Positions 34,711 to 62,086 of a stretch of 64,000 bases of DNA are shown here, in pieces. Within the stretch, counting starts at the first letter, position 1; every line of letters begins with the position of its first letter. The position numbers were made by a program, and so were the translations under genes. The notes beneath the pieces were generated by a model. It did not search any database. It was not told the origin of the DNA and was given only the letters and a program-made list of their open reading frames with translations. This DNA is from Chrysemys picta bellii (Eukaryota), in contig NC_088799.1 in assembly GCF_011386835.1 (NCBI RefSeq), positions 24,180,001 through 24,244,000 of the forward strand, in the 5' to 3' direction.

Positions 34711-34840
34711 AAGTATCAGAGGGGTAGCCGTGTTAGTCTGTATCCACAAAAGCAATGAGGAGTCTGGTGGCACCTTAAAGACTAACAGATTCATTTGGGT
34801 ATAAGCTTTCATGGGTAAAAAACCCGCTTCTTCAGGTGCC
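34711..34840 (-). mobile_element. Penelope-like terminal fragment with a minimal hammerhead motif
   Basis: aagtatcagaggggtagccgtgttagtctg terminus; minus strand reads gcac-CTGAAGA-agcgggttttttacccat-GAAA-gcttatac; TSD not evident. Confidence 0.8.
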
Positions 34841-36013: not shown

Positions 36014-36686
36014 AAAAGTTTGCCCACCCCAGTACAGTGCAAAACTCAATCATCTCAACCATGTATTCTAATATAGGTCTAACAACATGGTATTTCATCA
36101 ATATGAGAGGGACCTTTAAATAAAATTCATGTCTACTCACCAAAAGAGAATTTATAAGGACTTTACTACACACAAAAATTGCACTAATTTATCTACATCA
36201 GTTTAGAAATTGGGTGGGCACTTTCTAAACCAATTTAAGAGTGTCCACACAAGGGGATTACACCCATTTCACTAAATCAGTGCAATCCCTTTGAGTGGAC
36301 ACTGTCAAATGCGTTTAAGAATGCCTTATATCCATTTAGCTGTATTCGTAAACTAAACCAATATAGGGCACACAAACCGATTTAGTTAAATCTGCACAAC
36401 TTTTGTGTTTAGACAAGGGCTAATTCTATGCTACATGTGACCTCTTTCTAATAGAAGGGTCCTATCACATGGTAAAAATGATTGTGTGGATGGCAGCCCC
36501 ATGTTTCCTTTCATGTAGGCTGGTGCCTATTTAAACTAAACTGAGTTGGAACATTCTTGGTTTTATAGTTCACTTTAATTTATGTCAAATAACACTAACT
36601 TAGAAACACTTCCAAGAATTTAAAGAACTAACCTGAGTAGGTGAGTTACTGTCTCACATATAAGTAACAGTCATTCACTAATCATA
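36014..36686. repeat. ~670-bp segment duplicated in inverted orientation at 55989-56011 plus 57318-57974
   Basis: Direct comparison shows about seven differences over ~670 bp. Confidence 0.95.
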
Positions 36687-36957
36687 GTTTCAGTGAATTC
36701 AAAAGTGGCCATCTGGAAGATGGCAGCACTGCAGTATATTGTGTCTGACAATGACTGCTAACACTTTTGTTACTATAGCAAATATTTAATAGAGCTTCAG
36801 TTGCTAAATCAGAGGCTGATTCTGAAAAGGCTCTGCATGAATATTCCTTTACACCTATGAGGCATTCCACCAAACTTTCGGATCCGACCCACCAGCCGTT
36901 TTAAGCCAGCCCTCGAGGTCCCGCTGGGGAGCGGAATCTGGGGCTTGACCAGCTGCA

Positions 36958-37175
36958 GTGCTCCAACCGGGGAGCAGGGTTGGGGGCTGCTCCAACTGGC
37001 TCCTGGAAGCCACAGCATGGCCCTGCTCCGGTGCTCCAACTGGGGAGCAGGGTTGGGGGCTGCTCAACGTGGCTCCTGGAAGCCACGGCATGGCCCCCTC
37101 TGGTGCTTCAGCCGGGGAGCAGGGTCACGGGTCGTTCCATGCGGCTCCCAGAAGCAGCAACATGGCCCCCCTCCA
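36958..37175. repeat. 72-73-bp minisatellite, ~3 copies, inside a GC-rich MITE-like sequence
   Basis: Units start gtgct(c/t)ca at 36958, 37031 and 37103. Confidence 0.8.
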
Positions 37176-37971
37176 CTCCTACCCACTCCAATGGCCCCCT
37201 CCGGCGCTCCAATGGGAGCTACAGGGGCAGTGCCTGTGGACAGGGCAGTGTGCAGAGCTGCCTGGCCGCATCTCCACGTAGGAGCCAGAGAAGGGACATG
37301 CCGCTACTTCCGGGAGCCACTTGAGGTAAGCGCTGCCCTCAGCCTGCACTCCTAAGCCTCTCCCCATGCTCCAACCCCCTGCCTCAGCCCCGATCCCCCT
37401 CCCACTCTCCAACCCCCTCGGTCCCAGCCCAGAGCACCCTCCTATACCCCAAACTCCTCATCCCCAGCCCCAGCCCCACCCCAGAAACAAATCTAGGACC
37501 TCATCCTGCCATCCTTATTCAGAACTGAGTAAAGTCCTTATTTGTCTGAGAAAACAATGCGGGGCCTCATTTTTGGTGTAAACTAATCTAGAAGGCACAA
37601 AGGGTAAATTTTCAGCAATATATGTTTGTGTAGGGATGAGGGGAAAAATTAATCACACACAAATCCTAAATTAGGGCCAAATTCTCTCCTTACTTAGGTC
37701 CAAGTTTAGCCCATTATTACATGAAGAGATGCCAGCTGCAAAGTCCAGATTTGGATTTAGATCTGAAGTTAACCAACGTTCAGTGGTGTTTGGGTCTCTA
37801 GTTTTGGTTCAGGACATTAATACAAGAGTCTCTGATAGAGGCAATCAGAACCAAAATGAGCGGAAATTCATCACTATCTGGGATTACATACAATTTTCCT
37901 CAAGAAAGGATGACAGAAAATGTCTGAAAGATAAAGGGTAATCTTTAGCTCAGGCTAATGGGGCTTATTAC

Positions 37972-38466
37972 GGTGTCTACACTGCAACTAAGACGTGTGA
38001 TTGCAGCACATGTCCACGCTAGCTTTGATCCAACTAAATCAAAGCTAGCTTCTCTCATAATAGCATTGTAGCTTTGGCAGCAGGGGCAGCAGCATAGGCT
38101 AGCTGTGAGAGTACATATTCAAGACCCTGGGCAGAGTTGTACTCAGGGGGCTAGTTCATGCCATTGGCCATGCTGCTGCGGCTACACTGCTATTGGTAGT
38201 CAAGCTAGCTGTGATCTAGATATGTCTACATGTGCTTCAAACACACCTCCCAATTGCAGTGTAGACATACCCAATGGGCATGTGTACACACTACAGACTG
38301 GAGCTCGGGCTCTGAAGCCCTGGAGAAAGTGAGGGGTGGGCTTGAGAACCCACACCACGTCAAAGCAGTCTACATGGCTATTTTTAGAGCACTAGCATGT
38401 GCCCTACTAGAACAAGTCTATAGACCTGGGCTTGGAGATTTTCTCCCAGATGCAGTGTAGACATGC
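37972..38466. mobile_element. Two adjacent palindromic gtctacact...agtgtagac MITEs
   Basis: ggtgtctacactgcaa ... cagtgtagacatacc (to ~38272), then gggcatgtgtacacact ... gcagtgtagacatgc. Confidence 0.55.
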
Positions 38467-41400
38467 TTTTAGTGGCCAACACAGTCCACAGACGGTGAGG
38501 TTAGAACAAATAGCGTATTACAAAGATAAAGGAAATGATGGAAGTCCAAGAAGTCATGCCTGTGTGAGGAAGGACTTAGAGGAGAAATACTTATTGAAAC
38601 CAAGTAAAAGATACTGCATTTGTGCCTAAGCAATGACTCTTTTGGAGGAACAGAGCAGGACAGAGGATTGCCAGACAGGAAAACTAATGGCTGCTAAGTC
38701 AGCCAAGTGCACCTCTTATCTTAGGATGCTGATTAAAGGGTAGCTTTCAGTCAACAGAAAGAGGTGGGTACTTTTGGTATTAGTGGTATTATGAATGTGA
38801 TTCAGTTTGAAAATATATCATACTGGAACAGAGGTCACAAGCTGAGACATAAAACTTGATTGCACAGGTGCAGGAAATCTGTAGGAAACACTCAATGAAT
38901 TCTTGCTGATCATATTAAAATAACCGAGTTTCATCTTTAAACTGATTTGAAGAGAGGAGCATTTGACAGGATTTGTTCCTAATGCAATAGAAAAAAATAT
39001 CACTGATACGGATTTTCTGTTCTAAAAGCAGGATAGATGCACTGCTAGCTCACATTCTGCAGCTGGCTGGAATAAAATAAGTAGTTCTAAAATATCAGTA
39101 GTCTAGATTTTATGTTCTGTGATTTACTCAGTCATGTTAAAAAGGGAAAGAACAGAAAAAGCATATTAAAGTCCACGTCAGGGACATATGGTTTATGTTA
39201 TGTTATATGGGTGTGGACCCTAGCAACTGCCACACTGGACACCATATTTTATACGGTCTCTAAGATAGTTCAAATTGTGCAAACTTCATTGGGATAGTAT
39301 ATTTCACCAAAAAGGTGACATCTGTTTAATCACAGATGGGATTTTCATAGCTCTCCCAGAAGATGTATTCTAGTTCATATTTCTTCTTGGCACAATTGTT
39401 AAAGTTGGAAATTGATAACCCTAGCCTAAAAATCTTTAGCTATACAGTATTTTTAATTAAAACTATATCATTATACAAGATGTGAGCAATTGTCATAACA
39501 AAGGACAGAGTCATATAGTGGACTATTAGAGGTACAGAAATGTTCTAATGTAAATGCTGTGTGATCGCAAACATGATTCTACTCAATCTGTTCACTACAT
39601 AAGCCTCTTCAATTTCAGTTTTTAAGTTGTTTAAAATTTCCCAGGAATTCATCAGATTTTTCAAAGTTTTGGCCCAAGCGAGGGGTCATGGGGGCGTCAT
39701 TTGAGCTCCCCGCCTCAGGTGCCAAAATGTTGTGGGCCGGCCCTGACTGGCAGGCTGTAGCTTTAAGTAGAGCCTTGGTTGGAACAAAACTCCATAAAAG
39801 TTGTGTGTTCATTTTCAATTGTGTCATATTTGTATGACAAAAAATAAATCAGGAAACGAGTCCAAGGTGTTTGGTCAAAACTACTGGAGTTTATTGCTTT
39901 TCCCTAAGGGCCTGACTGCAGTGTACTGAGCACCGCCTGTAAGAGCTGAATGCTCTCAACTCTGAAACCCCGGGGAATAGAGGACACTTAGCAGGAGCTC
40001 AGCACCTGGCAGAATTACTTCCTATGTACTTCGATTTCACTACATAACATTTTTTATTGAGCCATGAGCAGCCTCATGTTGATCTCCTGAATGTTTCAGT
40101 AAATAAATTCTGAATAACTGCAAGAGTCCAACTATTCCAGAAACATGTAACCTTTTAGGACTTTTATGACCCTTCTGCATGAGGTTTTTTTTTTTTTTTT
40201 TTTCTGACTGCACATAAGTGATATGTGTAGGATTGAGCACTCCTTCTGTTGTTTGAAATTACTCCCATGAAAAGAAAAACTCAACAGTAGCCGTTTCCTT
40301 TCTGAACACCTTTGCCTTTGGTTCAAAACAAAGTCACATCCAATACAGGGTCCAGTCACAACCCTGCAAGACTTACTCTCATCAGCAGTCCCTATTCATG
40401 TAAGTAATGCCATTGAAATTAATGAGACTACAGTCCTAAGGACTGCTCTCATAAGGTCTATTTGCATGAGGAAGGATTTGCAAAATCAGACCTATAGTTT
40501 TGATATTAATCACTGTCTGAGAGAAATGGATCTGTGCAAAAAATGTAATTTACATTTCTGGTGAAACAGTTAAAAAAAATGTTGTGGGCCAGCCCTGACT
40601 GGCAGGCTGTAGCTTTAAGTAGAACTTAATCATTTTTCACTGATTTTGCCAAAACTGGAACATAGTGCAAGGTTATTCCTCCTCTTCTGTGTTTTGCTAT
40701 TTTCCTAACCCAATTTATTTTTTAGAAACAATAATCTCTTTTTCCCTGTAAAAATTGTGAATTTTCATCTGGGGCATGTCTTAGAAAATTGTCATTTTTC
40801 CTCCAGGGTAGAATTTTAATATTTTTCTTTCTACTAAAGTTTGTTTGCTAGTATAACTGGCAAGTTTTTGCCCATCAACTAGTTCCCACATTGTCACAAA
40901 CCTACGAAAAACCTCCAAGCTTGCATATGGCCAAGCCATTATTGCTTATGTATGCAAAAGGAGAAAGGAAGACTAGTTTTAGGCCATATGTCATAATCTT
41001 CATTAGCATCTGGTAAAGAAATGCCGACCTATAGCTAAAATTCTAACACTTTGTCCTTTACTCAAACCATCATAGAAAATCAGAGACACAACAGCATAAG
41101 GAAACTTTGGAAGATCAGCCGAGACTTGTTGCCTGAATTACTCTTCACCTCTTAGTCCCTGATCATGCAAGCAGATCCAGTTGCAGGATCAGGACCTTAG
41201 TTCAGTCTTGTCTAAACTACAAAATATCTCCCATCCTGAGAGGGTTTTTATGCACAGTTCTTGAAAATCTTTTCAGTTAACAGTTCATTTTGTCTGTCTA
41301 TGCATTTATGCCATGCACATCATTCCTGGTGTCTGAGTGCCTTCATGTAGGACTATATAGTGAAATAGTGAGAGACCCTTAATAATAATGTGATGAATCC

Positions 41401-42454
41401 TGCACATAGCACTCTCAAAAATTTAATGCAGAGCTAAGGTTGTGTAGTGAGTGACAATTGCATATTTCCTGGTTTTCAGACATTTAAGTTTGTTTTTCCA
41501 TAATTCTTTATTTCTTGGTTTTCAGAGGTTTAAGTGGAGGTGCATTTCACATTCTAGAATGGTACAAGTCACTGACGACCAGCCTTAACTCTGCATTAAT
41601 GAAGGTTTTGGGCAGTGAATGTTGTTTTTTGAAGCAGTGGTGGTAGTGAGGGAGGCATGGTTGAGGGGCGTTGTGTGTGTCTGAAGGAGGAGTGAGGATT
41701 GATGGCTTTCCCTGGGAACACCACACGACAACTCAGACCCAGCTCTGCCCACCTCCTGGGCCCTCCATAACCCAGTAGGACTGGAGGGCCATGGGGAGGA
41801 GGGAATGTGATAACCGATGGACTGTGAGGAGCAGAGCTACCTGCAAAGGCAGCAGGGGGAAGGTAAGAGAGCTTCAGACTCTACTCCACTCTTGGGGAGG
41901 GGAGGGAGGCTAATGTAAGGGGAAAGGCCTTTTCAGCCTAGGAGGATTTCAGAGTTGTAACATACCCCATTCATCTCAATGGAATGTTCTCAGCTGAATA
42001 AAAATATAGGGATGAATATAGCCTGGCCCAGTAGCTCAGAGAGATTTGAACTGACCCATTCATCTCAATGGTGTTCTCTGCCCGCCTCTCCTAAAGTCTA
42101 CTCCAGCTCTGCTGTTGAATACCAGTTTTCAAAACAATCTTTGTATACAGATGGATTTTAGAGCAATTTGAATATTAAAATATAAAAATCCTTATTGGAG
42201 GGGCAGTCTGTAGCTGATGTATTTGAACACCTGGACAAAATGACTCCAATTTGCACAACCAAGAACACCCTTTCCCTGATAATCTCACCATGCTTGTGAA
42301 TTTTACAGCATTTTGAAAATTAAAAGAAGCTCATTTTGTGGGGATCTGGAATTTAGGAACCCCATGATCAGTGATACCAAATTTGTACCACAAATGCCAG
42401 CCCTGGTTGCCACATATCAGTTTTTTAGGCAATTAAGTGGATCTTAGAGCACTT

Positions 42455-43572
42455 TAAAAAGCAACAGAGGGTCCTGTGGCACCTTTGAGACTAACAGAAG
42501 TATTGGGAGCATAAGCTTTCGTGGGTAAGAACCTCACTTCTTCAGATGCAAGTAATGGAAATCTCTAGAGGCAGGTATATATCAGTGTGGAGATAACGAG
42601 GTTAGTTCAATCAGGGAGGGTGAGATGCTCTGCTAGCAGTTGAGGTGTGAACACCAAGAGAGGAGAAACTGTTTCTGTAGTTGGATAGCCATTCACAGTC
42701 TTTGTTTAATCCTGATCTGATGGTGTCAAATTTGCAAATGAACTGGAGCTCAGCAGTTTCTCTTTGGAGTCTGGTCCTGAAGTTTTTTTGCTGTAAGATG
42801 GCAACCTTTACATCTGCTATTGTGTGGCCAGGGAGGTTGAAGTGTTCTCCTACAGGTTTTTGTATATTGCCATTCCTGATATCTGACTTGTGTCCATTTA
42901 TCCTCTTGCGTAGTGACTGTCCAGTTTGGCCAATGTACATAGCAGAGGGGCATTGCTGGCATATGATGGCATATATAACATTAGTGGACGTGCAGGTGAA
43001 TGAGCCGGTGATGTTGTAGCTCAGCTACAATATGCCAGCAATGCCCCTCTGCTATGTACATTGGCCAAACTGGACAGTCACTACGCAAGAGGATAAATGG
43101 ACACAAGTCAGATATCAGGAATGGCAATATACAAAAACCTGTAGGAGAACACTTCAACCTCCCTGGCCACACAATAGCAGATGTAAAGGTTGCCATCTTA
43201 CAGCAAAAAAACTTCAGGACCAGACTCCAAAGAGAAACTGCTGAGCTCCAGTTCATTTGCAAATTTGACACCATCAGATCAGGATTAAACAAAGACTGTG
43301 AATGGCTATCCAACTACAGAAACAGTTTCTCCTCTCTTGGTGTTCACACCTCAACTGCTAGCAGAGCATCTCACCCTCCCTGATTGAACTAACCTCGTTA
43401 TCTCCACACTGATATATACCTGCCTCTAGAGATTTCCATTACTTGCATCTGAAGAAGTGAGGTTCTTACCCACGAAAGCTTATGCTCCCAATACTTCTGT
43501 TAGTCTCAAAGGTGCCACAGGACCCTCTGTTGCTTTTTACAGATTCAGACTAACACGGCTACCCCTCTGATA
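42455..43572. mobile_element. Fold-back Penelope-like (Neptune-type) retroelement encoding a GIY-YIG endonuclease C-terminus, with two hammerhead motifs
   Basis: Identical mirror ORFs at 42611-42940 (-) and 43054-43383 (+): YIGQTGQSLRKRINGHKSDI...VGEHFN...RETAELQFI. The left arm extends to NVIYAIICQQCPSAMYIG. Arms 42455-42963 / 43031-43539; TSD cttagagcactt(t) at 42443 and 43573. Confidence 0.95.
43445..43485 (+). ncRNA. Minimal type I hammerhead ribozyme motif (mirror copy on minus strand at 42509-42549)
   Basis: gcat-CTGAAGA-agtgaggttcttacccac-GAAA-gcttatgc: core CUGANGA/GAAA, helix II gtg...cac, palindromic AAGCTT at helix III, predicted UUA cleavage triplet, helix I gca/tgc. Confidence 0.75.
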
Positions 43573-44652
43573 CTTAGAGCACTTTGAAAATTATAAGCAA
43601 CTCATTTTTGTTTGGGGGGCAGGGGAGCCTATTTCCCAGGAACCTTTTAACCAAATGACCCCAGATTTGCATCACAGATTGTACCCAGATCCCTGTTGTG
43701 CATGTGAAGACACCTCTCCAGCATTAAGCTACCAGCTCTCTATACACAGGCTCCACTCTCCTTCTAGTCCTGGTAAGCTTGGAGAGGTCATAGAGAGGAG
43801 GGAAGTTGGTGGGTCTGCCTTCTTACCTGCCACAGAGTAGCACTCCCACAGTACATGTGCAAATCATTCTCCAGTGCATCACCCAGGCTTGGGCCAGCTC
43901 GTAGATTTAACTTTAATCCTAATTTTTTTTTTAAATATTGCTTCCCTAAAGGGGCAGTGGGTGCCAGATTCTAGCCGACTTGAAACCTGCCCTGGTGATA
44001 TTAGTTTGGAGTAGATCAATGCCCTAGTTTGATCTGCGGGTGTATGCAAAACATGTTATAAGAACTATCATTTTGATATCACATGATGTTTTTTAGGGGA
44101 TGTTGTATCTCAGGAACATGTTGCTGAAACAACCACAGGTTTGGATCATTAACCCTACACAGAGCCCCCAACGAGACAAAGGAAATTTCAAGGAAATCAG
44201 AGTATGCCTGTGGGTTTTAGAGTACTTAGAAAAATCAGCTCTTAAAGAGTAAGCGGGTCTCAACCTTAACTATAGTGGTGCTACCAGCTTAGTACACTCT
44301 GCAGATGCAGACAGCAATAAAGGTAGTGAAACAGAAGGGTTCTGCTCTGCCAAACCCACCCCCTCATACAAGACAAACGCTATCATAGAGGCCACTGCAG
44401 CTCTAGAGGCTCCAAAAGGGCCACTAAGTGGTGTACTGACATTTCAACCTTAAGTGGAGGATTTTGTCTAACGGACCCTTGCAAAGCAGTATTGTGTAAA
44501 GCCCATTTACTCAAGTTGTGCACAGAGGAGAATATTTAGCCCATGGTTCAACAGCAATCGTCTCCCTATATGTGTAAAATTCCCAAGAGTTCTGTGCTTT
44601 CTCTGAAAACAAAATATTTCTATACATACCAAAAGTACAGAATATCAGTGCC

Positions 44653-45479
44653 TAGGGTTACCATATCTAATAAATAAAAAAAGAGGACCCTCCACGGGCC
44701 CTGGCGCCGCCCATTTCCCCACCCCTAGCCCCGCCCCAACTCTGCCCCTCCCCGCCCCAACTCCGCCCCCTCCTCCCTCCCACTCCCAGCCACGCGGAAA
44801 GGGCTGCCCGAGCGCTACCGGCTTCACGATTTGCCGGGCAGCCCCCAGACCCTGCGCCCCCGGCCGGCGCTGCCCCAGCGCAGCTGGAGCCCGGGAGGGG
44901 AAGTGCCCAGCCGGGGGCGCAGGGTCTGGAGGCTGCCCGGCAAACCGTGAAGCCGGTAGCGCTCGGGCTTTGGGCAGCCCCTATGCCTCCGGACCCTGCG
45001 CCCCCAGCCGGGCACTTCCCCTCCCGGACTCCGGCGGCGCAGGGTCCGGAGGCACGGGGGCTGCCCGAAGCCGGTAGCGCTCGGGCAGCCCGGCTCTTAA
45101 ACAGAGCCGAAGAGTCGGGGAGGAGCAGAGCCGCCGCGGCCGGAGGCTCTGCTCCTCCCCTGACTCTTCGGCTCTGTTTAAGAGCCGAGCTGCCTGAGTG
45201 CTACCGGCTTCGGGCAGCCCCCGTGCCTCCGGACCCTGCGCCGCCGGAGCCCGGGAGGGGAAGTGCCCGGCCGGCAGCTGGGGTCCGGAGGCAAGGGGGC
45301 TGCCTGAAGCCCATAGCGCTCGGGCAGCTCGGCTCTTAAAGAGAGCCAAAGAGTCAGGGGAGGAGCAGAGCCGCCATTTTCCCGGACATGTTCGGCTTTT
45401 TGGCAATTCCCCCCGGACAGGGGTTTGACTGCCGAAAAGCTGGACATGTCCGGGAAAAAGAGGACATATGGTAACCCTA
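44653..45479. mobile_element. Young CpG-rich hAT MITE with internal palindrome
   Basis: Perfect TIRs tagggttaccata / tatggtaacccta; perfect 8-bp TSD tcagtgcc (44645-44652, 45480-45487). Confidence 0.95.
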
Positions 45480-47287
45480 TCAGTGCCAACATCAGCCATT
45501 TTGACCCAAGACCAGAATTTTGCCTAGTGATATAAATGTTAATGCTGTCAGCTCTGTTATTTATGGAAAGTAGGCCTCCTCTTAAGTTGTAAAATACCAG
45601 GAATAGCAGTAAGCATTCTGGAAATGCAGAGATTATCTGTACTACTGTGCTACTCTCCTACTTTCTTTGAATCTCTAAACTGGAAACATTTCAAAGTGTT
45701 TTACGAGGACTCTTATTTCCTACATGGGATTTGTTTTGTCTATTTCATGGTCTTGTTTATCTGTGTTAAATGTAGGCTGCAGGCACAATCAATGTTGGAT
45801 TAAAAAGCAAAATTTTCTGAGACTTGTGATTAATAGTAAATCAGTTAGCTCTTTAGGACATTTGCATCTGTTTGCCTTAATGTGAATCTTTATTTCTCAA
45901 TGCCCAAGAATGACTGTCATCAGTATGACAGCCTAAAAAAAGCTAAGTCCTTACCAGACTTGAACATTCCTTTAATTATAGAGGCAGCAATACTAGTGAC
46001 TCCATAATTAATATTACTTGGAAGTTTTCACTCAGAGTTAAGTGCTCCTTAGGTGTGAAAAACTTTCTGGCAGTGGAGCTGATGTAGTTCTGATATGCAA
46101 AGGAGGGGTAGGATTCACAGGGGCCTGTGCAGAGGTTGCTCCCTAGACTGGGTGAGCATTCCTTCTCTTCCCACTGACCAGCCCCATGCACAGATATCTA
46201 TTGCCCAGCCTGTTGCTTGGGCTGTATGTTCTGGATGGGAGGATTTGGGCCTTAAGTTATGCATGTGCTACAGATCATCAAAATAAAACTATGTCCAAAC
46301 ACACCAGAACTTTTCAGTTCTGATTTGAATCTAAACTTGGTGAGTGTCTCTTCCCAGTCCCTGTAGTAGACCAAATGATCCGCCGCAGATCTGACTGTTG
46401 TGATGTAGGTCCATATATCATCCAGTATTTCCAGTCTGTCACTTGGGCCTGTACTCTCAACGTGAGACTTTTCCCCATTCTGTCAATGTTATTTTCATGT
46501 ATTAAAAAATGTTTTATAGTGATTATTTCAAGCTATGAAGGCATTTCCCTTTGTTCCCTTTTATACAATACCTTTTTCACAGATTCTGATTACACTTGCT
46601 TGGTTATGCCTATATAAACACTTGGGAACAGAAAGAGATAATTTCTGCAGGTAGCAGAGTACTGTGAATATTGCTTCTCAAGCTCTCCAAACATCCTGTA
46701 TCATTTCAGTGTTGGTTTCGCTCTATTAAGATGATGAAATATTTTTTACAGCCTGATAACGTATACTGTTCTAGTTTAATTCAAAAGCTCATGATAACTC
46801 CACGACCATGGAAAAGAGCCTTGAGGTTAATAGTTTGTACATAAAAGCTTTCTGCATTGATAAGACTTTTGGTTTTCAATTTTTACTGAAAAGGTCCCAG
46901 GTTTTACAAAAACTATTACTCAGTTTTTAGTGATTTTCACCCGAATTTTGGACTATTTAAGTACATGAAAATACTGATTATGCTAAGAAAATCCAATACA
47001 TTACATTAGATTGCTGTGTTTATGTTAATCATAAATTAATCTAAGTGCAAATGTGAGGTTGTCTGTTAAAGAAATGCAATGTCATGGAATGGAATCAATT
47101 CTGCCTTCTTCCTGTTCTACTCCTCTCATGGTACTGCTCTGCTACCTACCCCAATAAAGGAGAACTAACAACTTAAAATGCCTTGTTCAAAAATGTTAAG
47201 TAACACTTAACTTCCAAACGTCTGAACAGCAAATGTAACTTTTCTTCGCTGTATAGAAAACACTGGCATTTTTATCTGTTTGAATAA

Positions 47288-50200
47288 TCAAAGTGGTGCT
47301 TTCTGTGCCTTCTTGGTTGCAAAGATTTGAACTGCTTCCTGAAGGTCCACAGTCTGGGCCAGCTCAAGCTCTATCGAGATGGTTGCAAGGCCAACCAGCC
47401 TCTCCTGTGTCATTGTGGAGCGTAGATGTGTTTTTATTAACTTCAGCTTGGAGAAGCTGCGTTCTCCACTGGCAGCTGTTACAGGAAGTGTTAGAAGTAT
47501 GCGCAGAGCAACAAAAGCATTTGGAAAGAGGGTGGTCAACTTATTTGTGCACATATATTCCAGAACAGCCTTTGGAGTTGATTGTGCTGAAATGTATATT
47601 GAAAGGGCTTTCAGTTCATCACCTAAATCACTCGCATCAATATCGTGCATGTCATCATGTGTCAACACTGTCTCTAGTGCCATGCATTGCTGGTCTTCTT
47701 TAGGTATAGTAAGGAGTTTTGGAATATCATACAACATCCAAATATACTGCTGTGTTCCTTGAGCTGCATTAAACGTTCTTCAAATGACTGTATTGCACAA
47801 TCTAGCACCTGGTTAAAGAATTCAACTTTGAATTGTTGTTCGGGGTCTCTTATGGGAATATCCCGTGCCTCGTAATCAAAATGTCTTCTTCTTCTTCGGT
47901 GACTCTTGTATTCTTGAATGGGTGGAAAAATAACTTCAGTGTGAAGTTCCTCTGCCAACTTCTGTGCACTCTTCAGAACATTTTGAAATCCCTCATCTGA
48001 CTGGTAAGACTATGGGTAGGACTTTGCTTTGTCCAGTTGTTCCATTGCTCCAGATATATCAAGGTCAACACCTTGGAGTCTCTTGCTTACAACATTTATT
48101 TCAAACAGTATGTCATGCCACTACACTAAGCCACACAGAAATTTGAAGTGATGTATGTTTCTGGTGAGTCCATTTCCCTCTGCCACTGTTCTCCCACGAA
48201 CAGTTCCTGTCATAGCATTATCCTCCATAATGGCAACTATGGCATCATCTATCTTCCCAATTTGGTGTTTGATAGGCTTTATCGCCTCCACTCGACTTTC
48301 CCATCGTGTGGCACTCGGTGGTTTCAGTGTCAGAGAGGATGTTCCCAGATGTTGCTTCAAAATTTGCCATCGATGAGTCGAAGAGAAAAATATATAGATG
48401 CTTTGAATTACATTAAAAAATTCAGCAGCCTCACTAGAAGCTGATGCTGCATCACTGACCACCAAGTTCAATGAATGAGAACTGCATGGGACAAAAAAAG
48501 TTTGAGGGTTTAACTTTCAGATCCGTGTCTGCACTCCTCTGTTCTTTCCTCTCATGTTGGCACCGTTATTGTAGCCCTGACCTCTCATGTCCGCTATCAC
48601 AATTCCCGTATTTTCCAGCTTTTTAAGAAGCACATTTGTCATACCAGATCCTGTAGTATCATCAATGTCAATAAATTCTAGAAAATGCTCTTTGACAGTC
48701 ACCACTGCAGGGACATTTTCACTAGGTTCTGTTGTTGTTACAAAACGCACCATTAAAGTCATTTGTTACATATGGCTGATTGCCAGGTGTGCAGTCCAGA
48801 ATAACAGACTAATATCTTGCTGACTTCAGATCTGTCACAATCTTCTGTTTGACTTTTGTTGCCAGTAACTGTATGATCTCATTTTGAATTGTTTTTTCAA
48901 GGTAGTGGTGTATGTACATTTCTTGGGTGGTGACTCTTCTTAGATGCTCCTGGAGTACAGCATCAAACTCAGCCATCAGCTCCCCAATTTTAAGGAAGTT
49001 TCCATTGTTTGGCACATATAGCTGATCTGAAGTGCCACGCAGTGCTAGGTTTTGGGTAGCAAGCATTCTCACAATGGCCATGAGCCTTTTCAGAACATTT
49101 TGCCAGTAAAGAGACTCTGATGCAATCTTCTCTTGATACTGATCATCTATGGTGGCCTTTAACCTTAGTCTCATCTCAAGCTCTTTCCACCTATGGAATG
49201 CTCTCTGGTGATTTGCTGCCTTCTCATGGCATGCCAGATTTCTAGCCAGATTTTCCCAGTCCTTTGGTCCTGTAGAACCCAATGTGGCTGGAACATTAGA
49301 CTCGAAGAGTTTGCAACAAAAACAGTATGCAGCATTCTGGGTTTTTGAGTACATAAGCCATGGCCTCTCCACTTTGTCACCATTGGGGATTTCAAGCCAG
49401 TAATGTGTGGGGCGGAAACTTCTATTTTCATTGTCTTTGGGGAACATGAAATTTTTCACTTTCTGTGGCCCATGCAGTACAAGGAAGTCCCTTGGGCTAC
49501 TGCTCAAGTGGATCCACAGTCTTGGATCATCTAGACTTAGGGAACTAAACTCAGGAGCAGCTGTTTCTTGCGCCTCCACCACACTCTTCTCTGATCTACA
49601 ATTTTCTTCAGGAAGGTGCATGGTTACATCCATTTGATATGGAGATATGGATGCTGCAGTAGCTGCCAGGTCACCTGCACTCTGACTAACTGGAAGATCA
49701 GGCATCTCCTCACCATTCACATCCTCACTGGGGCCGGAAGGCTCACCATGAACATTTGTGTCTATGTATCTCAGGAAAGCTCCTTCCTGCTTAGATAGAA
49801 AAGCTTCCTTTGCTTTCTTTCTGTCATGAACATACAGCTAAGGGTAGCAGTAAATCCCTCCTTTACCTGTAAAGGGTTAAGAAGCTCAAATAACCTGGTT
49901 GGCACCTGACCAAAAGGACCAACAAGGGGAGAAGATACTTTCAAATCTAAGGGTGAAGGTTTTTGCTTTGTGCTCTGTGTGGGTGCTGTCTCCAAGACAA
50001 AGAGAGAGACCAAGCAAGTAATCCAGCTCCTACTGAAATGACACATCTAATATTACAGAAATAGTAAGTAATAGCAAGGAAATGCGTTAGATTATCCTTT
50101 GTTTTAGCTTGTGAATTTTCCCTGTGCTAAGAGGGAGGTTTATCCCTGTTTTTGTAACTTTGAAGTTTTGCCTAGAGGGGAAATCGTCTGTGTTTTAAAT

Positions 50201-50646
50201 CTTATTACCCTGTAAAATTACCTTCCATTCTGATTTTACAGAGGTGCTTCTTTTACTTTTTTTTTCTTTATTATAAAGTTCTGTTTTTTAAGAATCTGAT
50301 TGGTTTTTAGTGTACTAAAAACCCAAGGGTCTGGTCTGTGCTCACCTTGTTTACCTATCTGGTTGGTAGATTATTCTCAAGCCTCCCCAGGAAAGGGGGT
50401 GAAGGGGTTTGGGGGGATATTTTGGGGAAACAGGAACTCCAAGTGGTCCTTTTCCTGAATCTTTATCTAACTCATTTGGTGGTGGAAACAGTACTCATCC
50501 AAGGACAAGGAAGGATTTGTGCCTTGGGGAAGTTTTTAACCTAACCTGGTAGAAATAAACTTAGGGGGTCTTTCATGCGGGTCGCCACATCTGTACCCCA
50601 GAGTTTTGAATGCTGCCCCAGAGGGGCGTTTTCTTCTTTCACTCAT
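47288..50646 (-). pseudogene. Degraded hAT transposase (Tip100/ZMYM1-like, DUF4371 type), split by an LTR
   Basis: ATG at 50646 (MSERRKRPSGAAFK|RKKAKEAF...); TTF-type zinc finger (RPWLMYSKTQNAAYCFCCKLF); LATQNLALRG...GNFL; ILDCTP; GQGYNNGANM; CSSHSLNL; TRWESR; SGERSFSKLKLIKTHLRSTM. Several in-frame stops (e.g. 48809, 48517, 48121) and frameshifts. Confidence 0.9.
49822..50605. mobile_element. Solo LTR with one end clipped, nested in the hAT ORF
   Basis: Begins TGtcatgaac; its other end matches the reverse complement of the LTR at 63358 but lacks ~24 terminal nt; the flanks rejoin in frame in the transposase. Confidence 0.8.
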
Positions 50647-52504
50647 GACTGCTGTTCTGTGCCAGCTATAGTGGCTCTCAATGCTCAATTGAAGGGGACA
50701 AATAAGCAGGCTGGTAGCAGGGCCTGAGTGAGGGAAGAGATCAGCATCTTAAGGGCCTAACTGGCTCCTACTACTTCAGTTGGCTGCCTGTTCTCCTCAA
50801 GTGAGTTCAAGGAAGCAGCAGGAAATAGGAAGCTCCCTGAGAAGCTGGTGTTAATCAGTCCAGGCTCCTGGGGGTGCTAGAGAGGTACATAAGAGGCTCT
50901 TCCTCCTCTCTCTCCCTGCAGCTCCTGCTGCTTTCTGTTATTCTCTCACCTTTTCTCCTGCCCGCCTGTTATGTCTCTTGTGCCCTCCTTCCTCCAGCAC
51001 AGCACTCCACCATCTCTGTGCATCTAGAGCAGAGAGAATACATATGCACCAGCAGCAGCCACAATTTTCTACACTCTGGGTCCTAGTGGTGCCCCCTCAC
51101 AGTTTGGCACCCGAGGCAGCCGCCTCAGTTCGCCTCATGGTAAGGCCAGCCCTGCTGCCAGTGACAATGTCATTAAAAGAGAAAAATGTCAGGTTGTTTT
51201 TTCAAGAAACATATATTGTTCCATTGCCTGCAGAAAGACTCGAAGCCCATTCACCTCTAATTTAAATTCCTTTTTACAGTGTTTGTTTGTTTAACTTTAT
51301 CAAATAAATCTTAGCAGTGTGTCTTCCAGAAAGAAAGATGTGCATGAAAGCTACTGAAATAATGTCACCTGGATTTTCAATTAAAAAAGTATCCTGTGGT
51401 ACTTACAGGATTTATATTAAAAATACTAATAGTTCTAGGCAGAAAATTTAAACCAAAATTGGGCCTGAAATGCTTTCAAACATCTTAGAATAATTCAAGG
51501 TTCTTTTTTTTTTTTTTTCCCAATTGGAAGGCCCTTCTCATTCCTACTTCCCTTTCCTATCATGTGTTTTCTTCTCACCATCCCATAGCACAGTGACAGT
51601 CCCTGCGCTGGATGTCACTTCCTTCGGAGTCTGAGCAGAATGACTGGAAAGTAACTGAGACACTGAAAAGCAACCCTGGCTGGCCTGGGCTGGATCCTGC
51701 ATTCCGTGTACATCCAAAGCTCCCTGTGATGTCAATGCAGGACTGAGCCTCTTGGGAGCTCAGGATTCAAACTCAGACCCTCCCATGTGCTGTAACAGTG
51801 CCAGAAATCCATCAGCGCAGCCACTGCACATAGTTTTGAATTCAAAACAACACAGCATTACGACTGGATTGGTATTCTAACCCTATTTCTAGAGACTATG
51901 TGCCTAATCCGAAACCCACTGAAGTTAACAGAAAGCCTCCCACTGACGTCGATAGAATTTGGCTCAGGCCTACAGTACGAGCTCAAGCAGATATGGAATA
52001 AACACCCCTCTGACACACACTGTTCTGACAGCAAAATATTAACTATTTAGCTGAACCTGGCAGGGTGGGGCCAAGTCACCAAAGAACTCTTATGTTCTTC
52101 CAAGGTACTCCTAGTTGCAGTTGGTGTTAGGGCTTGTGATTTGTTCATATTCTGTCTAATTAGTATTGAACAAGGCCCTAACACGGCATTAAGGGCACTG
52201 TGCTATTGGAGTTTCCATGATCCAGAAAGGACCAAAATAAAATAGAGGATGCTGATTACTTATGCTCATAGAAATTATTTCACTTTTAGTAAGAGTTGAG
52301 TGTTAGACATGGTGTCTTTGGAAAAATTCCAATCCAGGTAATTAGTTATATCCTGTCTCTCTAAATTCTTCCTGATTGATTCGGAATTCTCCTCTTCCTA
52401 AACTGCTGTGCAGTGTGGCTGTGCATTGTTAAACAGCTACTGTATTCCACTCCAGAGGTGGTTGCATTTCAGTAGTTTGTGATGTCCTCATATAAACGTC
52501 CCTC

Positions 52505-52965
52505 TGTCACAGAGTTTGGGGGAGACAAGGCCCTGCACCCCCGGCTTCCTGCGATTCACCGTTACTCTCAGCCAGACAGTAGAACAGAAGGTTTATTAGA
52601 TGACAGGAACACAGTCTAAACCACAACTTGTAGGCATAAACAGGACCCCTTAGTCAGGTCCTTCTGGGAGGTAGGGAGCTTAGACCCCAACCTTGGGGTT
52701 CCCTCCGATTCTCCAGCCAGCTCAAGACTGAAGAACCCCCTCCAGCAGTCTCACTCCCCCAACCCCTGGCTCCTCCTCCAGCCTTTGTCCAGGGTCCCGG
52801 GCAAAGGTGTCACCTGGCCCAACCCCCCTCCCGGCTCGGGTTACAGGCTCAGGTATCATCCCTTAAGAAAAGTCATCCCCTGCTATCCCATCCCCCATGC
52901 AGAAAGTCCCAGTAAAACTAGACGACATTCCCAGGTCAGTCCACCCCTCTCCCTACTGCATCACA
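52505..52965. mobile_element. Solo LTR
   Basis: TG...CA termini (tgtcacag ... gcatcaca); 5-bp TSD ccctc (52500-52504, 52966-52970). Confidence 0.85.
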
Positions 52966-53638
52966 CCCTCAAAGGAGTATTCTGAGGTTCAATAGTGTAA
53001 CATTAATAAAGCACTTTGAGTTCCTTAGATGGGCGAGGCTACATCAGTCAAAATAGACATTAAATAAAAAGCCCTGATACCATCCAAAGAATTTGAATTT
53101 ATTTCTTTAGATTATTTATATACAGTGGCTTAAATAAAAGTTCTTTTCTCCACTATAGAAATCCTTTGTGACAATGCCCAACATGGATAAAGCATGGTTT
53201 GCTCTTGCATTACAGAAGAGACCAAGCCATATTTTAATCCATTTCCAAATCTAGCTACAGTCTTGAACTTTGCAGGGCTGTGTCACAATTCCGGAGCATG
53301 ATGAAAACATAGTTCTGCCTCATCTACACTGGGATACACAAATGTTTTAATAATACTGGGAAATACCATATTGTGACTAGCTCCCAAACAGGGTGAGATC
53401 CATGGTGGGGTGTACCATGCAGTCCTGAACCATCACATGTTTTGTAAAGGATCTGCTCAGTATAACAAAAAAACCCACATACCCCTCTCTATTTGCAATA
53501 CTGAAGGCTGCGAACCTGCTACTTTATTCAAGTGTATAACAAAAAGAATGGAGAGAAAACTCATGTACAAAATGGGAAGGAAGGGCTGGAGCCTAACTCC
53601 ACCCCATTATACTCTGGGTAACCCAGTTAACCCGTAAC

Positions 53639-54565
53639 TAAGGCTGCAAGTCTGTCACGGAGGTCATGGATTCCGTGACTTTCCATGACCTCCGTGACTT
53701 CTGCAGCGACCAGCAGCAGCAGTTTGGGTATGTGCGAGGGGGCTCAGGGTTAGGAGGTTTGGGGGGTGGGTGCTTACCTTGGGGTGGGGGGCTCCCCGGC
53801 TTCCACTGGCATGGCCCTGCAGCTCCAAGGCAGCGGAGGGGCCAGGGGGCTCAGCGCGCTGCCCACACCCGCAGGCACCACCCCCACAGCTCCCATTGGC
53901 TGCGGTTACCGGTCAATGGAAGCTGCACAGCCAGTGCAGCACGCGGAGCCCTCTGGCCTCTCTGCCACCTAGGAACTGCAGCCAGGATAGGCGAAACTGG
54001 GTAGGGAGCCCCACCCCACCCCCAGCACCAGCGGGGGTCCCAGGCCACCCGCCACTGCCTCCCCACAGCACCAGTGGGGGTCCCAGGCCGCCCGCCGCTG
54101 TCCACCCTGCCCAGCACCAGTGGGGGTCCCGGGCCGCCTGCCACTGCCCGCCCCGCTTAGCACCAGCGAGGGTCCTGGGCCGCCTGCCAGTGCCCGCCCC
54201 GCCTAGCACCAGCAGGGGTCCCAGGCCGCCTGCCGCTACCCCCCTGTCGTCCCAGCACCAGCGGGGGTCCCGGGCCACCCACCACTGCCCATCCTCTCCC
54301 CTCCCAGCAGCACCAGCGGGGGGTTCCAGGCTGCCCGCCGCTGCCCAGTCCCCGCAGCGCCAGTGGGGTCCCAGGCCACCTCCCCCAGCACCCGCGGCGC
54401 TCCTGGACCACCCCCGCCTCCAGAGCATAACCTCCCCCCCCCAAGTTTTAGTTAGGGGTATATAGTAAAAGTCATAGACAGGTCACAGGCCATGAATTTT
54501 TGTTTACTGCCCGTTCCCTGTCCATGATTTTTACTAAAAATACCCATGACTAAAACGTAGCCTTA
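53639..54565. mobile_element. MITE (taaggct...agcctta) with internal GC-rich minisatellite
   Basis: Terminal taaggct / agcctta; ~9 copies of agcaccagYgggggtcccRggcc at 42-50-bp spacing over ~54020-54370; TSD weak (cccgtaac / attataac). Confidence 0.65.
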
Positions 54566-55336
54566 ATTATAACCACTTTACTACAATACGTTTTCTCTCT
54601 CATCCAGCTTTCAACAAATGGCATAAGCCAACAAAGTTATGAAACTATAATAAAGGAAAACTAACTTCCTTACCACATGCTCTAGAAGCCTCTTCAGACT
54701 GGAGACAAAACTCTTTTAGACTTTGCATGTAACTATGTTTCAAAACATATTTAAACATGGTTCAGAGGTGGTTACAACAATCCCTACTTACAATATGGCT
54801 TATTCAGCCAGTTTGGATTTGAAAAGCAAATGGTCTAGTTGACCAGAAGGAAGAAGATAGTGTTCCAAAGTGATGTTCTCCCTCCTGTGTGTACCCAGTC
54901 CTAGGACAGGAACTTGGATTCCTATCCTACATGTTACACTGTTTAAAAAAAAAAAAAATTTACCCACACTACTAAAACAGAGAAATGTGTGTGTACGGAA
55001 AAGCACTGCCAAGGCACTACTATATCAAAACATCCCCACCCTGAAATCTCCCCGCAAGTAAAGCTCTGGTCAATTCTCTGAGTAATAACATGTCTTGGAC
55101 AGAAAGTTCCTTTGACTAGAACATTTGCACACTGCTTAGTCACATAAATAAACAGTATTATTAGTAAATATGTAGTTGTTCTAGTGTTTGTTTTAAGAAG
55201 AACCCATAAGCAAATCTCATTATTCCAGTCTTTCTTACTTGGGTAATGCTTTATATTTAATAGAAATTTTTGAGTGCCATCTAGGGGCAAACAGCATTTG
55301 CCAAAGGACTTTTGAGGACTGTTATACAGTATAAAG

Positions 55337-58272
55337 CAGAGGTGGGCAAACTACATCCCGTGGGACCGTCCTGTCTGGCCCTTGAGCCCCCAGCCAGGGA
55401 GGCTAGCTCCCAGCCCCTCCCCCACAGCCTCAGCTCACCGTGCCGCCAGCGCTCTGGGCAGCGGGGCTGTGAGCTCCTGCCCAGCAGTGTGGCTGCAAGA
55501 GCCGCCAGGTGTCGTGTATTAAATTGCTCCTTGTAGGAATGTGCTACTTAGGGAGCACCAGGACTGGCAGCCGTACGTAGTACACTATAAGTAGCACATT
55601 CCTACAGGGAGCAATTTAATACACTACACCCAGGTAGGGAAGGCTGTGCCTCCCCAAATCGCCTGGCCCCCACCCCCTATCTGCCCCCTCCCACTTCCCG
55701 CCCCCTGACTGCCCCCTCCGAACCCCCCGACCCATCCAACCCCCCTGCTCCTTGTCCCCTGACTGCCCCCTCCTGGGACCCCCCGCCCCAACCGCCCCCT
55801 GGGATCCCACCCCATATCCAACACCCCCTGTTCCTTGTCCCCTGGGACCCCTGCCCCTTATCCAACTCCCCCGCTCCCCACCCCCTTACCATGCCGCTCA
55901 GAGCACCAGGACTGGCATCTGAAAGTAGTACATCGTAAGTAGCACATTCCTACAGGGAGCAATTTACTACACTACAGGTTTAATACATTATGATTAGTGA
56001 ATGACTGTTACCAGAGGTGAAAGTAAGCCGGTACGGAGGACCAGGACCGGTAAGAAAAGGTGCAGTCTGACTCCTCCTCCAGCCAGGCTGACAACGCTAG
56101 GCTCCGTGCTTTCCCCCTGCCTGGCACTCAGCAGCGGGTGCAAGGGCTCCCCTCTAGCTTGCAGCAGGGAGACTGGCTGAGAGGGAGAAGCAAGCCACTG
56201 TTCAACCCCCAGGGTTAGGAGCCGTTTCTGGCATCCTTGTTAATTTCACTCACAGTTGCTGGGGGGAGGGGGCCGGGGAATGGTGTGTTTGACTATGGCA
56301 GGGGCAGTTCTTTTCTGCCCCCGGGATGAGGGCACAACAAATACAAGCATTTGGCTGCATAGCTTAAATCCTCCCCACCCCCAACTCAGCAGGGGCTCTC
56401 CCCTCTAGCTGCCTGCATAAGAACATAGGGTGCAATCTCAGATCTCTTTTTGTTTTGTCCTGCCTGCAGAGTGCAGTGGCTGAAATTGACAAAACTTTCT
56501 CTAAGTATTTTGTATATTTCATGCAGGCTATTCCAGTTGTCCTTCATTCACCCCTGCCCTGCCTTCCCCTACTACTAGCCACGCACTGGTGTGCCCCCTG
56601 CACTCTTTTATGTGCCTGGAAGGGAGATTAAAAAATCCTTGATATCTGACTTGCTAGGAAATAGGGAGGATCTAGGGAAAGCAGGGCACTGGTGGGCATG
56701 GTGCAACGTAGTCCCTTGCCCTCCCTGGCTCCCACCATGTGGGGGTATGGCACTCAAAAGCTAACTTTGGAACATCCGTATGAATGTCTTCCTGGGAAAA
56801 CAAAATCTTATTGTCTTGCTTCACAGATCTAAATCTACTCTGATCCAGGTATGTTCTAAATGTATAGGTACAGTATGGATGGATCTCTCAAAAAAGATAG
56901 CTCTTCAGTGTAGGAGTTGGACCAACAGTCCCCTGGGGAAGGACTGATTCCATTAAGCAGCACACATTAAGCAGAAGTTCCTGAGGTGTTAGCCCAGAAA
57001 CATTGTCTCCCCCACACACCCCTTAAAAGGGCACTGGCACCTCCCCCACCCCCGTCCCGATTTTTCACATTTGCTGTGTGGTCACCCTACCCAGGGTTCC
57101 CAGCCACCTCTGCAGCTGGTAGCTCTGGGGGTGATTTAAAGGACCCGGGGCGCCTAGCTTCAGCTGGATCCCCAAGCCCTTTTAAATCCTGATTTAAAAA
57201 TCCTGGGATTTAAAGGCCCCACCTCTTCCAGTAGAGGCTACGCCTCTTCCGGCTGAGGCCCTGCCCCCTCCGCAGGACTCTGGAGTACTGGTAAGTCCTT
57301 TAAGTTACTTTCACCCGATTGTTACTTATATGTGAGACAGTAACTCACCTACTCAGGTTAGTTCTTAAAATTCTTGGAAGTGTTTCTAAGTTAGTGTTAT
57401 TTGACATAAATTAAAGTGAACTATAAAACCAAGAATGTTCCAACTCAGTTTAGTTTAAATAGGCACCAGCCTACATGAAAGGAAACATGGGGCTGCCATC
57501 CACACAACCATTTTTACCATGTGATAGGACCCTTCTATTAGAAAGAGGTCACATGTAGCATAGAATTAGCCCTTGTCTAAACACAAAAGTTGTGCAGATT
57601 TAACTAAATCGGTTTGTGTGCCCTATATTGGTTTAGTTTACGAATACAGCTAAATGGATATAAGGCATTCTTAAACCCATTTGACAGTGTCCACTCAAAG
57701 GGATTGCACTGATTTAGTGAAATGGGTGTAATCCCCTTGTGTGGACACTCTTAAATTGGTTTAGAGAGTGCCCACCCAATTTCTAAACTGATGTAGATAA
57801 ATTAGTGCAATTTTTGTGTGTAGTAAAGTCCTTATAAATTCTCTTTTGGTGAGTAGACATGAATTTTATTTAAAGGTCCCCCTCATATTGATGAAATACC
57901 ATGTTGTTAGACTATATTACAATACATGGTTGAGATGATTGAGTTTTGCACTGTACTGGGGTGGGCAAACTTTTTGGCTCAAGGGCCACATCTGGGTGGG
58001 GAAATTGCATGTAGGGCCATGAATGTAGGGCTGGGGCAGAGGGTTGGGGTGCGGGAGGGAGTGCGGTGTGCAAGAAGGGGCTCAGGGCAGGGGATTGGGG
58101 TGCAGGGAGGCGTGCAGTATGTGGGAGGGGGCTATGGGCAGGGGGTTGGGGTGCAGGAGGGGCGTGGGATGCAGCAGAGGGTTGAGGTGCAGGAGGGGTG
58201 CAGCAGGGGGGATCAGAGCAGGGTGTTGGGGTGCAGGAGGGGTGCGGGGTGCGGCAGGGGGTTGGGGTGCAG
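55337..58272. mobile_element. Composite, rearranged hAT-MITE locus with captured DNA
   Basis: Left TIR cagaggtgggcaaac at 55337 preceded by gtataaag (55329-55336); the same 8-mer recurs at 58273-58280, exactly where the GC-rich MITE-like sequence stops. Confidence 0.6.
56012..57317. mobile_element. Non-autonomous hAT element nested in the duplicated segment
   Basis: TIRs cagaggtgaaagtaa / ttactttcacccg; TSD actgttac / attgttac; the empty site is visible in the paralogous copy near 36664-36671. Confidence 0.9.

Positions 58273-60820: not shown

Positions 60821-61225
<405 letters not shown>

Positions 61226-61927: not shown

Positions 61928-62086
<159 letters not shown>

What the first reader, a model, noticed from the sequence alone, without database searches (positions are those of the whole stretch)
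36014..57974. ~670-bp, ~99% identical inverted duplication about 20 kb apart
36014-36686 is the reverse complement of 55989-56011 plus 57318-57974, with about seven differences. Most of it looks like ordinary AT-rich sequence rather than a bounded transposon, and no TSD flanks the 36-kb copy. One breakpoint falls ~17 nt inside a hAT-type terminus (ggggtgggcaaactttt), which continues as a MITE only in the 58-kb copy. Inference: homology-guided template switching at a transposon tip.
Basis: partly seen in the sequence, partly recalled or inferred. Interest (0 to 1): 0.7.

Follow-up and report, generated by a model that had tools for sequence, protein, structure and literature searches.

The report
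Host DNA copied into hAT relic
A 673-base stretch of ordinary turtle DNA sits in two mirror-image copies 20 kb apart; both are real and shared by related turtles, and the second copy most likely arose when a broken cut-and-paste transposon was patched with nearby DNA, a known and ordinary process.

Summary
Window 36014-36686 is the reverse complement of 55989-56011 plus 57318-57974, with 6 substitutions and 1 single-base indel.

- **Not an assembly error.** Independent short-read contigs from a second individual and three related taxa (about 1.0-1.5% diverged) bridge both junctions of the 36-kb copy.
- **Not a transposon family.** The ends of the segment carry about 1-3x contig depth, while true repeats beside it carry 100-70,000x.
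- **Older than it looks.** The duplication predates the split of these taxa.

The new point is the setting of the 58-kb copy. It lies between the two halves of one 8-bp target-site duplication (GTATAAAG, 55329 and 58273). With it are the left part of a hAT MITE, 12 nt of filler and a 317-nt hAT tip fragment that is flipped. The 58-kb copy is therefore probably the derived one.

The likely history is that, after hAT excision, the gap was patched by copying the 36-kb locus backwards (Pack-TIR-type abortive gap repair). These cannot be told apart here.

The scan noted similar hAT flank captures elsewhere in this genome. This is a known kind of event, and interest is modest.

The parts
36014..36032 (-). 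Solo 19-nt hAT tip (CTGGGGTGGGCAAACTTTT on the minus strand) at the outer edge of copy A. Nothing MITE-like lies to its left.
   Evidence: The left flank is about 1x unique DNA.
36033..36686 (+). Copy A of the 654-bp host segment, the probable donor and native copy. It is flanked by unique DNA.
   Evidence: Contigs of 4 runs bridge both junctions (records 3, 12, 13, 18, 20, 26, 27).
36154..36424 (.). Old palindromic MITE-like repeat inside the duplicated segment. It is the only multi-copy part.
   Evidence: Inverted arms. About 7-9x summed contig depth in bins 36171-36504.
55329..55336 (+). Left copy of the 8-bp target-site duplication GTATAAAG.
55337..55976 (+). Left part of a hAT MITE. It has an intact tip (CAGAGGTGGGCAAACT) and a mosaic interior with a palindromic unit and a repeated 76-nt unit.
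   Evidence: (I8, I9, D5).
55977..55988 (+). 12-nt filler at the junction between the MITE part and copy B. It holds the 9-mer TTTAATACA, also present 360 nt upstream in the same MITE (55615; reverse complement at 55515).
55989..56011 (-). Copy B, inner 23 nt (matches 36686-36664).
56012..57317 (+). Nested hAT-like insertion of 1306 bp, present in copy B only. Its ends are CAGAGGTGAAAGTAAG.. and ..TTACTTTCACCCG. The 8-bp TSD lies at 56004-56011 and 57318-57325 (7 of 8 match).
   Evidence: A contig break at 36669|36670 in X5, X6 and X9 suggests it is present in the related taxa too.
57318..57955 (-). Copy B, main part (matches 36671-36033). It is the probable captured copy.
57956..58272 (+). 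Flipped hAT terminal fragment: a tip (CTGGGGTGGGCAAACT) plus a G-rich arm. The tip points the same way as the left tip at 55337, and the interior end abuts the right TSD copy.
   Evidence: The D3/D8 repeat units end at 58273.
58273..58280 (+). Right copy of the 8-bp target-site duplication GTATAAAG.
   Evidence: The chance of this 8-mer lying within 3 nt of the arm boundary is about 3e-4.

Best explanation
This is a real, old, two-copy inverted duplication made by DNA repair at a hAT transposon. The 36-kb copy (A) is the native one. About 19.3 kb downstream, a hAT MITE had inserted at the target GTATAAAG. When that MITE was later cut out by transposase, the gap was only partly restored from the sister copy, giving the left part 55337-55976. 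The growing strand then stuttered (12-nt filler), jumped to the A locus and copied it backwards (654 nt plus hAT tip sequence). It ended with 317 nt of tip-plus-arm in flipped orientation and was end-joined to the untouched right flank. The tip at A is the remnant of a MITE that once abutted the segment. There are two versions. In version 1, only 19 nt were left at A, and they guided a second template switch onto a MITE tip. In version 2, the whole arm was still there, was copied in one run, and was later deleted at A down to 19 nt. A second hAT-like element then landed in copy B. Shown: the anatomy, the two-copy status, and presence in four taxa. Inferred: the direction (A to B), the excision, and the order of template switches.
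For: Copies and differences. Both junctions of A are bridged, with at least 45 nt on each side, by contigs of an independent individual (X15) and of three taxa that are 1.05-1.54% diverged. Contigs over the segment have about twice the depth of their neighbours in X5 (94.8 vs about 50) and X6 (76.2 vs 39-47). In X5, X6 and X9 they end at 36669, exactly where copy B departs. The composite 55337-58272 is bounded by identical GTATAAAG octamers, one next to a perfect hAT tip and the other exactly where the G-rich arm repeats end (chance about 3e-4). Everything between them, copy B included, was therefore inserted there. Both hAT tips at the B locus lie on the plus strand, so the right fragment is flipped. 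The junction at 55977-55988 has a 12-nt filler containing a 9-mer templated from 360 nt away, which is typical of error-prone repair. The A-side junction at 36686|36687 has no filler and unique 1x flanks. hAT elements capturing nearby DNA in cis by gap filling, with 1-36 bp of microhomology, are documented in animals (PMC8277862).
Against: No outgroup lacking the duplication was found, so the direction rests on the TSD argument alone. The flipped tip fragment is not the normal Pack-TIR layout. It needs either an extra template switch or a vanished MITE at A. No second remnant or TSD of such a MITE is visible left of 36014. hAT excision usually leaves small footprints, yet the right TSD copy is intact. 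Copy B was not itself laid with reads. Contig depth is only a rough guide to copy number.
Confidence: 0.5

Rival explanations
1. Aberrant hAT transposition with inversion. Transposase cut the MITE's right tip at the tip/flank boundary, and the tip was joined to the target site just left of the segment at 36 kb. The roughly 20-kb piece between the breaks was re-joined in inverted order, and 673 nt were copied as fill-in at one junction (equivalently, an inversion with a staggered break). A later flip between the two arms gave the present order.
For: The host segment abuts the very end of the tip at both copies, as after a strand transfer. The flipped fragment abuts the right TSD copy precisely, as after a transposase cut. 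The two copies are inverted and flank a 19.3-kb spacer, the geometry expected for inversion-associated duplications. Alternative transposition by the hAT elements Ac/Ds makes inversions, duplications and TSD-flanked composite insertions in maize (PMC4270019 and PMC8225341).
Against: It needs three breaks, one at an unexplained site inside the MITE, plus a 673-nt templated insertion and an extra flip of the spacer. The composite lacks a transposon tip at its right outer end, unlike maize composite insertions. No outgroup showing the un-inverted order was available.
Confidence: 0.2
2. The 36-kb copy is the derived one: a templated insertion at a double-strand break between 36013 and 36687, copied from the 58-kb locus. 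Copying began or ended 19 nt inside the MITE tip and 12 nt short of the other transposon.
For: It explains the 19 nt of tip at A without any lost MITE. Both ends of the copied stretch lie within 20 nt of structured, hairpin-prone transposon ends, which could stop a polymerase. A 7-nt inverted repeat spans the 36686 junction.
Against: Copy B lies inside a TSD-bounded insertion, so it cannot be native there, and a third, now lost, source would be needed. There is no microhomology or filler at either A junction. The only filler is at the B-side junction. A is present in all four taxa sampled.
Confidence: 0.15
3. The 673-bp unit is an unrecognised low-copy transposable element, or part of one.
For: Its middle (about 36154-36424) is an old palindromic MITE-like repeat with about 7-9x summed depth.
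Against: At a threshold of 80% likeness, the two end thirds of the unit carry only about 1-3x the flank depth in four genomes. The SINE and MITE blocks nearby carry 100 to over 70,000x. The unit has no terminal repeats and no TSD, and the window holds only two copies.
Confidence: 0.03
4. Assembly artefact: a false duplication or a chimeric join.
For: None was found. Raw or long reads could not be checked.
Against: A 2328-nt contig from another individual spans the whole of A and both junctions. Contigs of three other taxa bridge the same junctions. The copies differ at 7 places, and one holds a nested insertion with its own TSD.
Confidence: 0.02

Closest known systems
Pack-TIR / Pack-hAT capture by gap filling (Tan et al. 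2021, PMC8277862)
   Same: Non-transposon DNA lies inside a TSD-flanked hAT element. It is a single-copy capture whose parent lies nearby on the same chromosome (about 20 kb). There is homology at a breakpoint (19 nt, within their reported range of 1-36 bp).
   Different: The right terminal fragment is flipped, so the two tips are direct and not inverted. The break must have been at the tip/flank boundary, which favours excision over an internal fragile-site break. The 19-nt match is itself transposon sequence at the donor.
Abortive gap repair after Ac/Ds or P-element excision, with filler DNA (my own knowledge: Rubin and Levy 1997; Yan et al. 1999; not checked here)
   Same: One end is restored, the interior is a mosaic, and short templated filler and ectopic sequence lie at the repair junction.
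   Different: This is a germline-fixed vertebrate case inferred from sequence only. The captured piece is long (654 nt) and inverted.
Composite insertions and inversions from alternative Ac/Ds transposition in maize (PMC4270019, PMC8225341)
   Same: hAT superfamily, an 8-bp TSD around a composite of transposon ends plus duplicated flanking DNA, and local action over tens of kb.
   Different: Maize composite insertions have a transposon terminus at both outer ends. Here the right outer end is MITE interior. No pair of reversed termini is evident.
Inverted duplications flanking inversions made by staggered breaks (my own knowledge: Ranz et al. 2007, Drosophila; not checked here)
   Same: Two short inverted copies bracket a roughly 19-kb segment.
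   Different: No evidence that the bracketed segment is inverted relative to any outgroup. The TSD logic requires further events.

Membership tests
Pack-TIR (hAT) | Non-TE sequence lies between two parts of one TIR element, bounded by a target-site duplication. | tested here: met
   GTATAAAG at 55329 and 58273 brackets the MITE part, the host copy and the MITE part.
Pack-TIR (hAT) | The two terminal inverted repeats are in normal inverted orientation at the outer ends. | tested here: not met
   Both tips (55337 and 57956) are on the plus strand. The right outer end is MITE interior.
Pack-TIR (hAT) | A parental copy of the captured sequence exists elsewhere, usually nearby in cis. | tested here: met
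   Copy A at 36033-36686 lies 19.3 kb away, is 99% identical and has unique flanks.
Pack-TIR (hAT) | An orthologous TE without the capture is present in outgroups. | not testable with these tools
   All four taxa laid already show signs of both copies.
Dispersed transposable element family | Many copies share the same ends, with terminal repeats and/or a TSD. | tested here: not met
   About 1-3x depth at the unit's ends against 100 to over 70,000x for true repeats. No terminal repeats or TSD.
Alternative-transposition composite insertion (Ac/Ds type) | Transposon termini at both outer ends of the composite, next to the TSD. | tested here: not met
   The left end meets this (tip at 55337). The right end does not: the G-rich arm interior abuts the TSD at 58272|58273.
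Inversion with staggered-break duplications | The segment between the inverted copies is inverted relative to the ancestral order. | not testable with these tools
   Contigs of about 0.3-2 kb cannot link the outer and inner junctions across the 673-nt arm.

The most novel reading that the evidence does not exclude
The locus is a fossil of aberrant, one-ended or alternative hAT transposition in a vertebrate germline. The MITE tip was cut by transposase and joined to a target 20 kb away, producing in one event an inversion, a flipped terminal fragment and a re-copied 673-nt flank. That class of transposase-driven rearrangement has been demonstrated experimentally mainly for maize Ac/Ds.
Probability: 0.15. 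Interest if true: 0.55.

Novelty: new member of a known kind. Interest (0 to 1): 0.28.

Why it matters
This is a clean, datable vertebrate example of how cut-and-paste transposons duplicate ordinary DNA nearby. All junctions are still readable: a perfect TSD, a templated 12-nt filler and a tip-level junction. The flipped tip fragment set exactly against the target duplication shows that a transposase cut was involved, and not just a random break. That bears on the open question, raised in PMC8277862, of whether such captures in animals depend on transposition. The two 673-nt arms could also mediate flips of the 19-kb spacer, which lies upstream of a ZAP-like (ZC3HAV1-type) gene. No function is implied for the duplicated DNA itself.

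Tried and rejected
- **Giant element.** I considered that the arms are terminal repeats of a 22-kb element such as a Polinton. There is no TSD at the outer edges, and the interior has no large ORFs other than a decayed hAT transposase.
- **Long target duplication at A.** I tested for one; the best flank alignment is not significant (p about 0.06).
- **Second tip or TSD copy left of 36014.** Only a 9-mer, TACAGTGCA, recurs, at 35639, with no tip beside it. I judged this to be chance.
- **Gene conversion to explain 99% identity.** It is not needed: 6 substitutions are compatible with the 1.05-1.54% between-taxon divergence (P = 0.11-0.44).
- **Sister chromatid, reversed-ends and macrotransposition schemes.** I worked these through on paper. 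None gives the observed junction set without extra steps.
- **Metagenome contigs.** A scan for the tip/segment junction found nothing.
- **Rfam.** No hits in the window.
- **Raw reads.** None were on offer, only Logan contigs, so copy number by read depth and long-read spanning could not be done.
Full report
**Observation**

The inverted duplication is present as described. The repeat finder reports arms 36077-36672/57317-57912 (596 nt, 99%) and 36014-36076/57912-57974. blastn adds 36664-36686 = 56011-55989. A base-by-base alignment gives 6 substitutions and one 1-nt indel over 673 nt. The window has no third copy.

Copy B (58 kb) is split by a 1306-bp element at 56012-57317. This element has hAT-like ends with an 11-nt perfect inverted core and an 8-bp target duplication, ACTGTTAC/ATTGTTAC. 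Copy A (36 kb) shows the uninterrupted target.

**Is it real, how many copies, and how old?**

Earlier notes of this scan identify the genome as a turtle, the painted turtle. Only Logan contigs were on offer, not raw reads. I laid contigs of four runs on 34000-39000 at 80% likeness. X15 has the same species label but comes from another sample and study. X5, X6 and X9 are three other taxa.

Both junctions of copy A are bridged in all four runs:
- 36013|36014 by records 3, 12, 18 and 26.
- 36686|36687 by records 3, 13, 20 and 27.
- Each record has at least 45 nt on both sides.

Substitution divergence from the window over the unique parts is 0.23% (X15), 1.05% (X5), 1.17% (X6) and 1.54% (X9).

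The evidence for copy B in the other taxa is indirect:
- The contig over the segment has about twice the word depth of its neighbours in X5 (94.8 vs about 50) and X6 (76.2 vs 39-47).
- In X5, X6 and X9 the contigs stop at 36669 with a 30-nt overlap to the next contig. This is exactly the base after which copy B departs into its nested insertion.
- The X5 contig carries the copy-B letter at five of the seven differing sites.

So both copies, and probably the nested insertion, predate the split of these taxa. This inference is direct for A and indirect for B. The 0.89% substitution difference between the copies is compatible with that age (P = 0.11-0.44), so gene conversion is not required.

At the 80% threshold, the SINE at 34.7 kb and the MITE block at 36.84-37.5 kb collect 100 to over 70,000 times the flank depth. 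The outer thirds of the segment collect about 1-3 times, and the middle (36171-36504) about 7-9 times. That middle is an old palindromic MITE-like repeat. The tool warns that contig depth is not a copy number, so I use it only for this order-of-magnitude contrast. The unit is therefore ordinary DNA that includes one old repeat. It is not a transposon family, and it is not a misassembly.

**Anatomy of copy A**

- 36014-36032 is a 19-nt hAT tip on the minus strand.
- It is followed by 654 nt of host DNA.
- Both flanks are unique, about 1x DNA.
- There is no TSD or long direct repeat, and no filler at either edge.

**Anatomy of copy B**

Reading the plus strand:

| Coordinates | Feature |
|---|---|
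| 55329-55336 | GTATAAAG, left TSD copy |
| 55337-55976 | Left part of a hAT MITE with a perfect tip and a mosaic interior (palindromic and repeated units; I8, I9, D5) |
| 55977-55988 | 12 nt of filler; its 9-mer TTTAATACA recurs 360 nt upstream in the same MITE |
| 55989-57955 | Copy B, with the nested element |
| 57956-58272 | A hAT tip plus 300 nt of G-rich arm |
| 58273-58280 | GTATAAAG, right TSD copy |

The octamer occurs only three times on this strand in 64 kb. The chance of finding it within 3 nt of the point where the arm repeats end is about 3e-4. The flanks at 55336 and 58273 were therefore once contiguous, and everything between them is inserted DNA, copy B included.

Both tips at this locus lie on the plus strand. 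The right-hand fragment is therefore flipped. Its tip faces inward and touches the host segment, and its interior end touches the intact right TSD copy with 1 nt of ambiguity.

**Direction**

Copy B cannot be native to a site defined by a split target duplication. Copy A sits in unique DNA with no filler. The simplest reading is that A is the donor and B the captured copy. This is an inference; no outgroup lacking the event was available.

**Mechanism (inferred)**

The intact right TSD copy next to MITE interior calls for a break exactly at the tip/flank boundary, which is where a hAT transposase cuts. I therefore favour excision of the MITE followed by abortive gap repair, in these steps:
1. 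The left end was restored from the sister copy up to about 55976.
2. The strand stuttered, leaving the templated 12-nt filler.
3. It switched to the A locus and copied it backwards.
4. It was finally end-joined to the right flank.

Two versions explain the tip:
- **Version 1.** A already carried only a 19-nt remnant. After copying it, the strand re-annealed through these 19 nt to the right tip of a MITE. Because of the orientation of the filler, this forces the flipped arm.
- **Version 2.** A still carried the MITE arm, which was copied in the same run. A later lost all but 19 nt by deletion.

Both versions need one deletion at A. Version 2 needs one switch fewer. I cannot separate them.

**Rivals**

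- **Transposase-driven integration or inversion** (0.2). The tip is integrated next to the segment, followed by a three-break inversion with 673 nt of fill-in. It explains the exact tip/segment junction but needs more steps.
- **B-to-A templated insertion** (0.15). It avoids a lost MITE at A but conflicts with the TSD logic.
- **Transposon family** (0.03) and **assembly artefact** (0.02). Both are effectively excluded.

**Comparison with what is known**

Capture of nearby host DNA by hAT and other TIR elements through gap filling is catalogued in animals (PMC8277862):
- 370 Pack-TIRs, 208 of them hAT.
- 57% lie within 15 kb of the parent.
- Microhomology at the breakpoints ranges from 1 to 36 bp.

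This locus works like that but fails one layout criterion, because the tips are not in inverted orientation. It also resembles, but does not match, the composite insertions of maize alternative transposition (PMC4270019), which have termini at both outer ends. Earlier notes of this scan report similar hAT flank captures and fold-back scars elsewhere in this genome. I used them as leads only.

**Limits**

- Only one read-laying run was allowed, and contigs only were available.
- A metagenome scan was blank.
- No turtle genome search or transposon library was available, so the MITE family structure rests on this window alone.

**Verdict**

It is a real and ancient example of a known kind of event. 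It has an unusual flipped terminal fragment and an unresolved role for the 19-nt tip homology. Interest is modest.

Noticed in passing
window 42452-43542: A perfect palindrome: two 513-nt arms that are 100% complementary, with a 65-nt spacer (I2). Zero mismatches could mean a very young event or an assembly artefact.
   Followed up: no
window 47288-49720, minus strand: A decayed autonomous hAT transposase in several frames: a TTF-type zinc-finger-like N-terminal ORF, DUF4371 and the hAT dimerisation domain. It lies in the spacer between the two copies. Its ends were not found, and no tip of the MITE type occurs nearby.
   Followed up: partly
window 22144-23121, minus strand: A long open exon with a CCCH zinc finger followed by a WWE domain. 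Its best solved relatives are the central domain of ZC3HAV1/ZAP. The duplication lies 13 kb or more upstream of it on that strand.
   Followed up: partly
window 54016-54426: Seven tandem copies of a 46-nt C-rich unit lie within open frames on both strands (D1). No Pfam match.
   Followed up: no
window 44806-45375: A dense nest of GC-rich inverted and direct repeats of 60-117 nt, 88-95% alike (I3, I4, I6, I7, D4, D6, D9). It looks like a stack of fold-back MITE copies.
   Followed up: no
window 36866-37490: A truncated high-copy MITE (100-1000x depth) with 72-nt tandem units and a C-rich arm that resembles the reverse complement of the G-rich arm at 57990-58272. It lacks its tip and lies only 180 nt from copy A. 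Similarity to the 58-kb arm is too low for blastn.
   Followed up: partly
window 60001-62000: A CpG-island-like block (63% G+C) with overlapping ORFs on both strands and no Pfam match. It is possibly a promoter or first exon.
   Followed up: no
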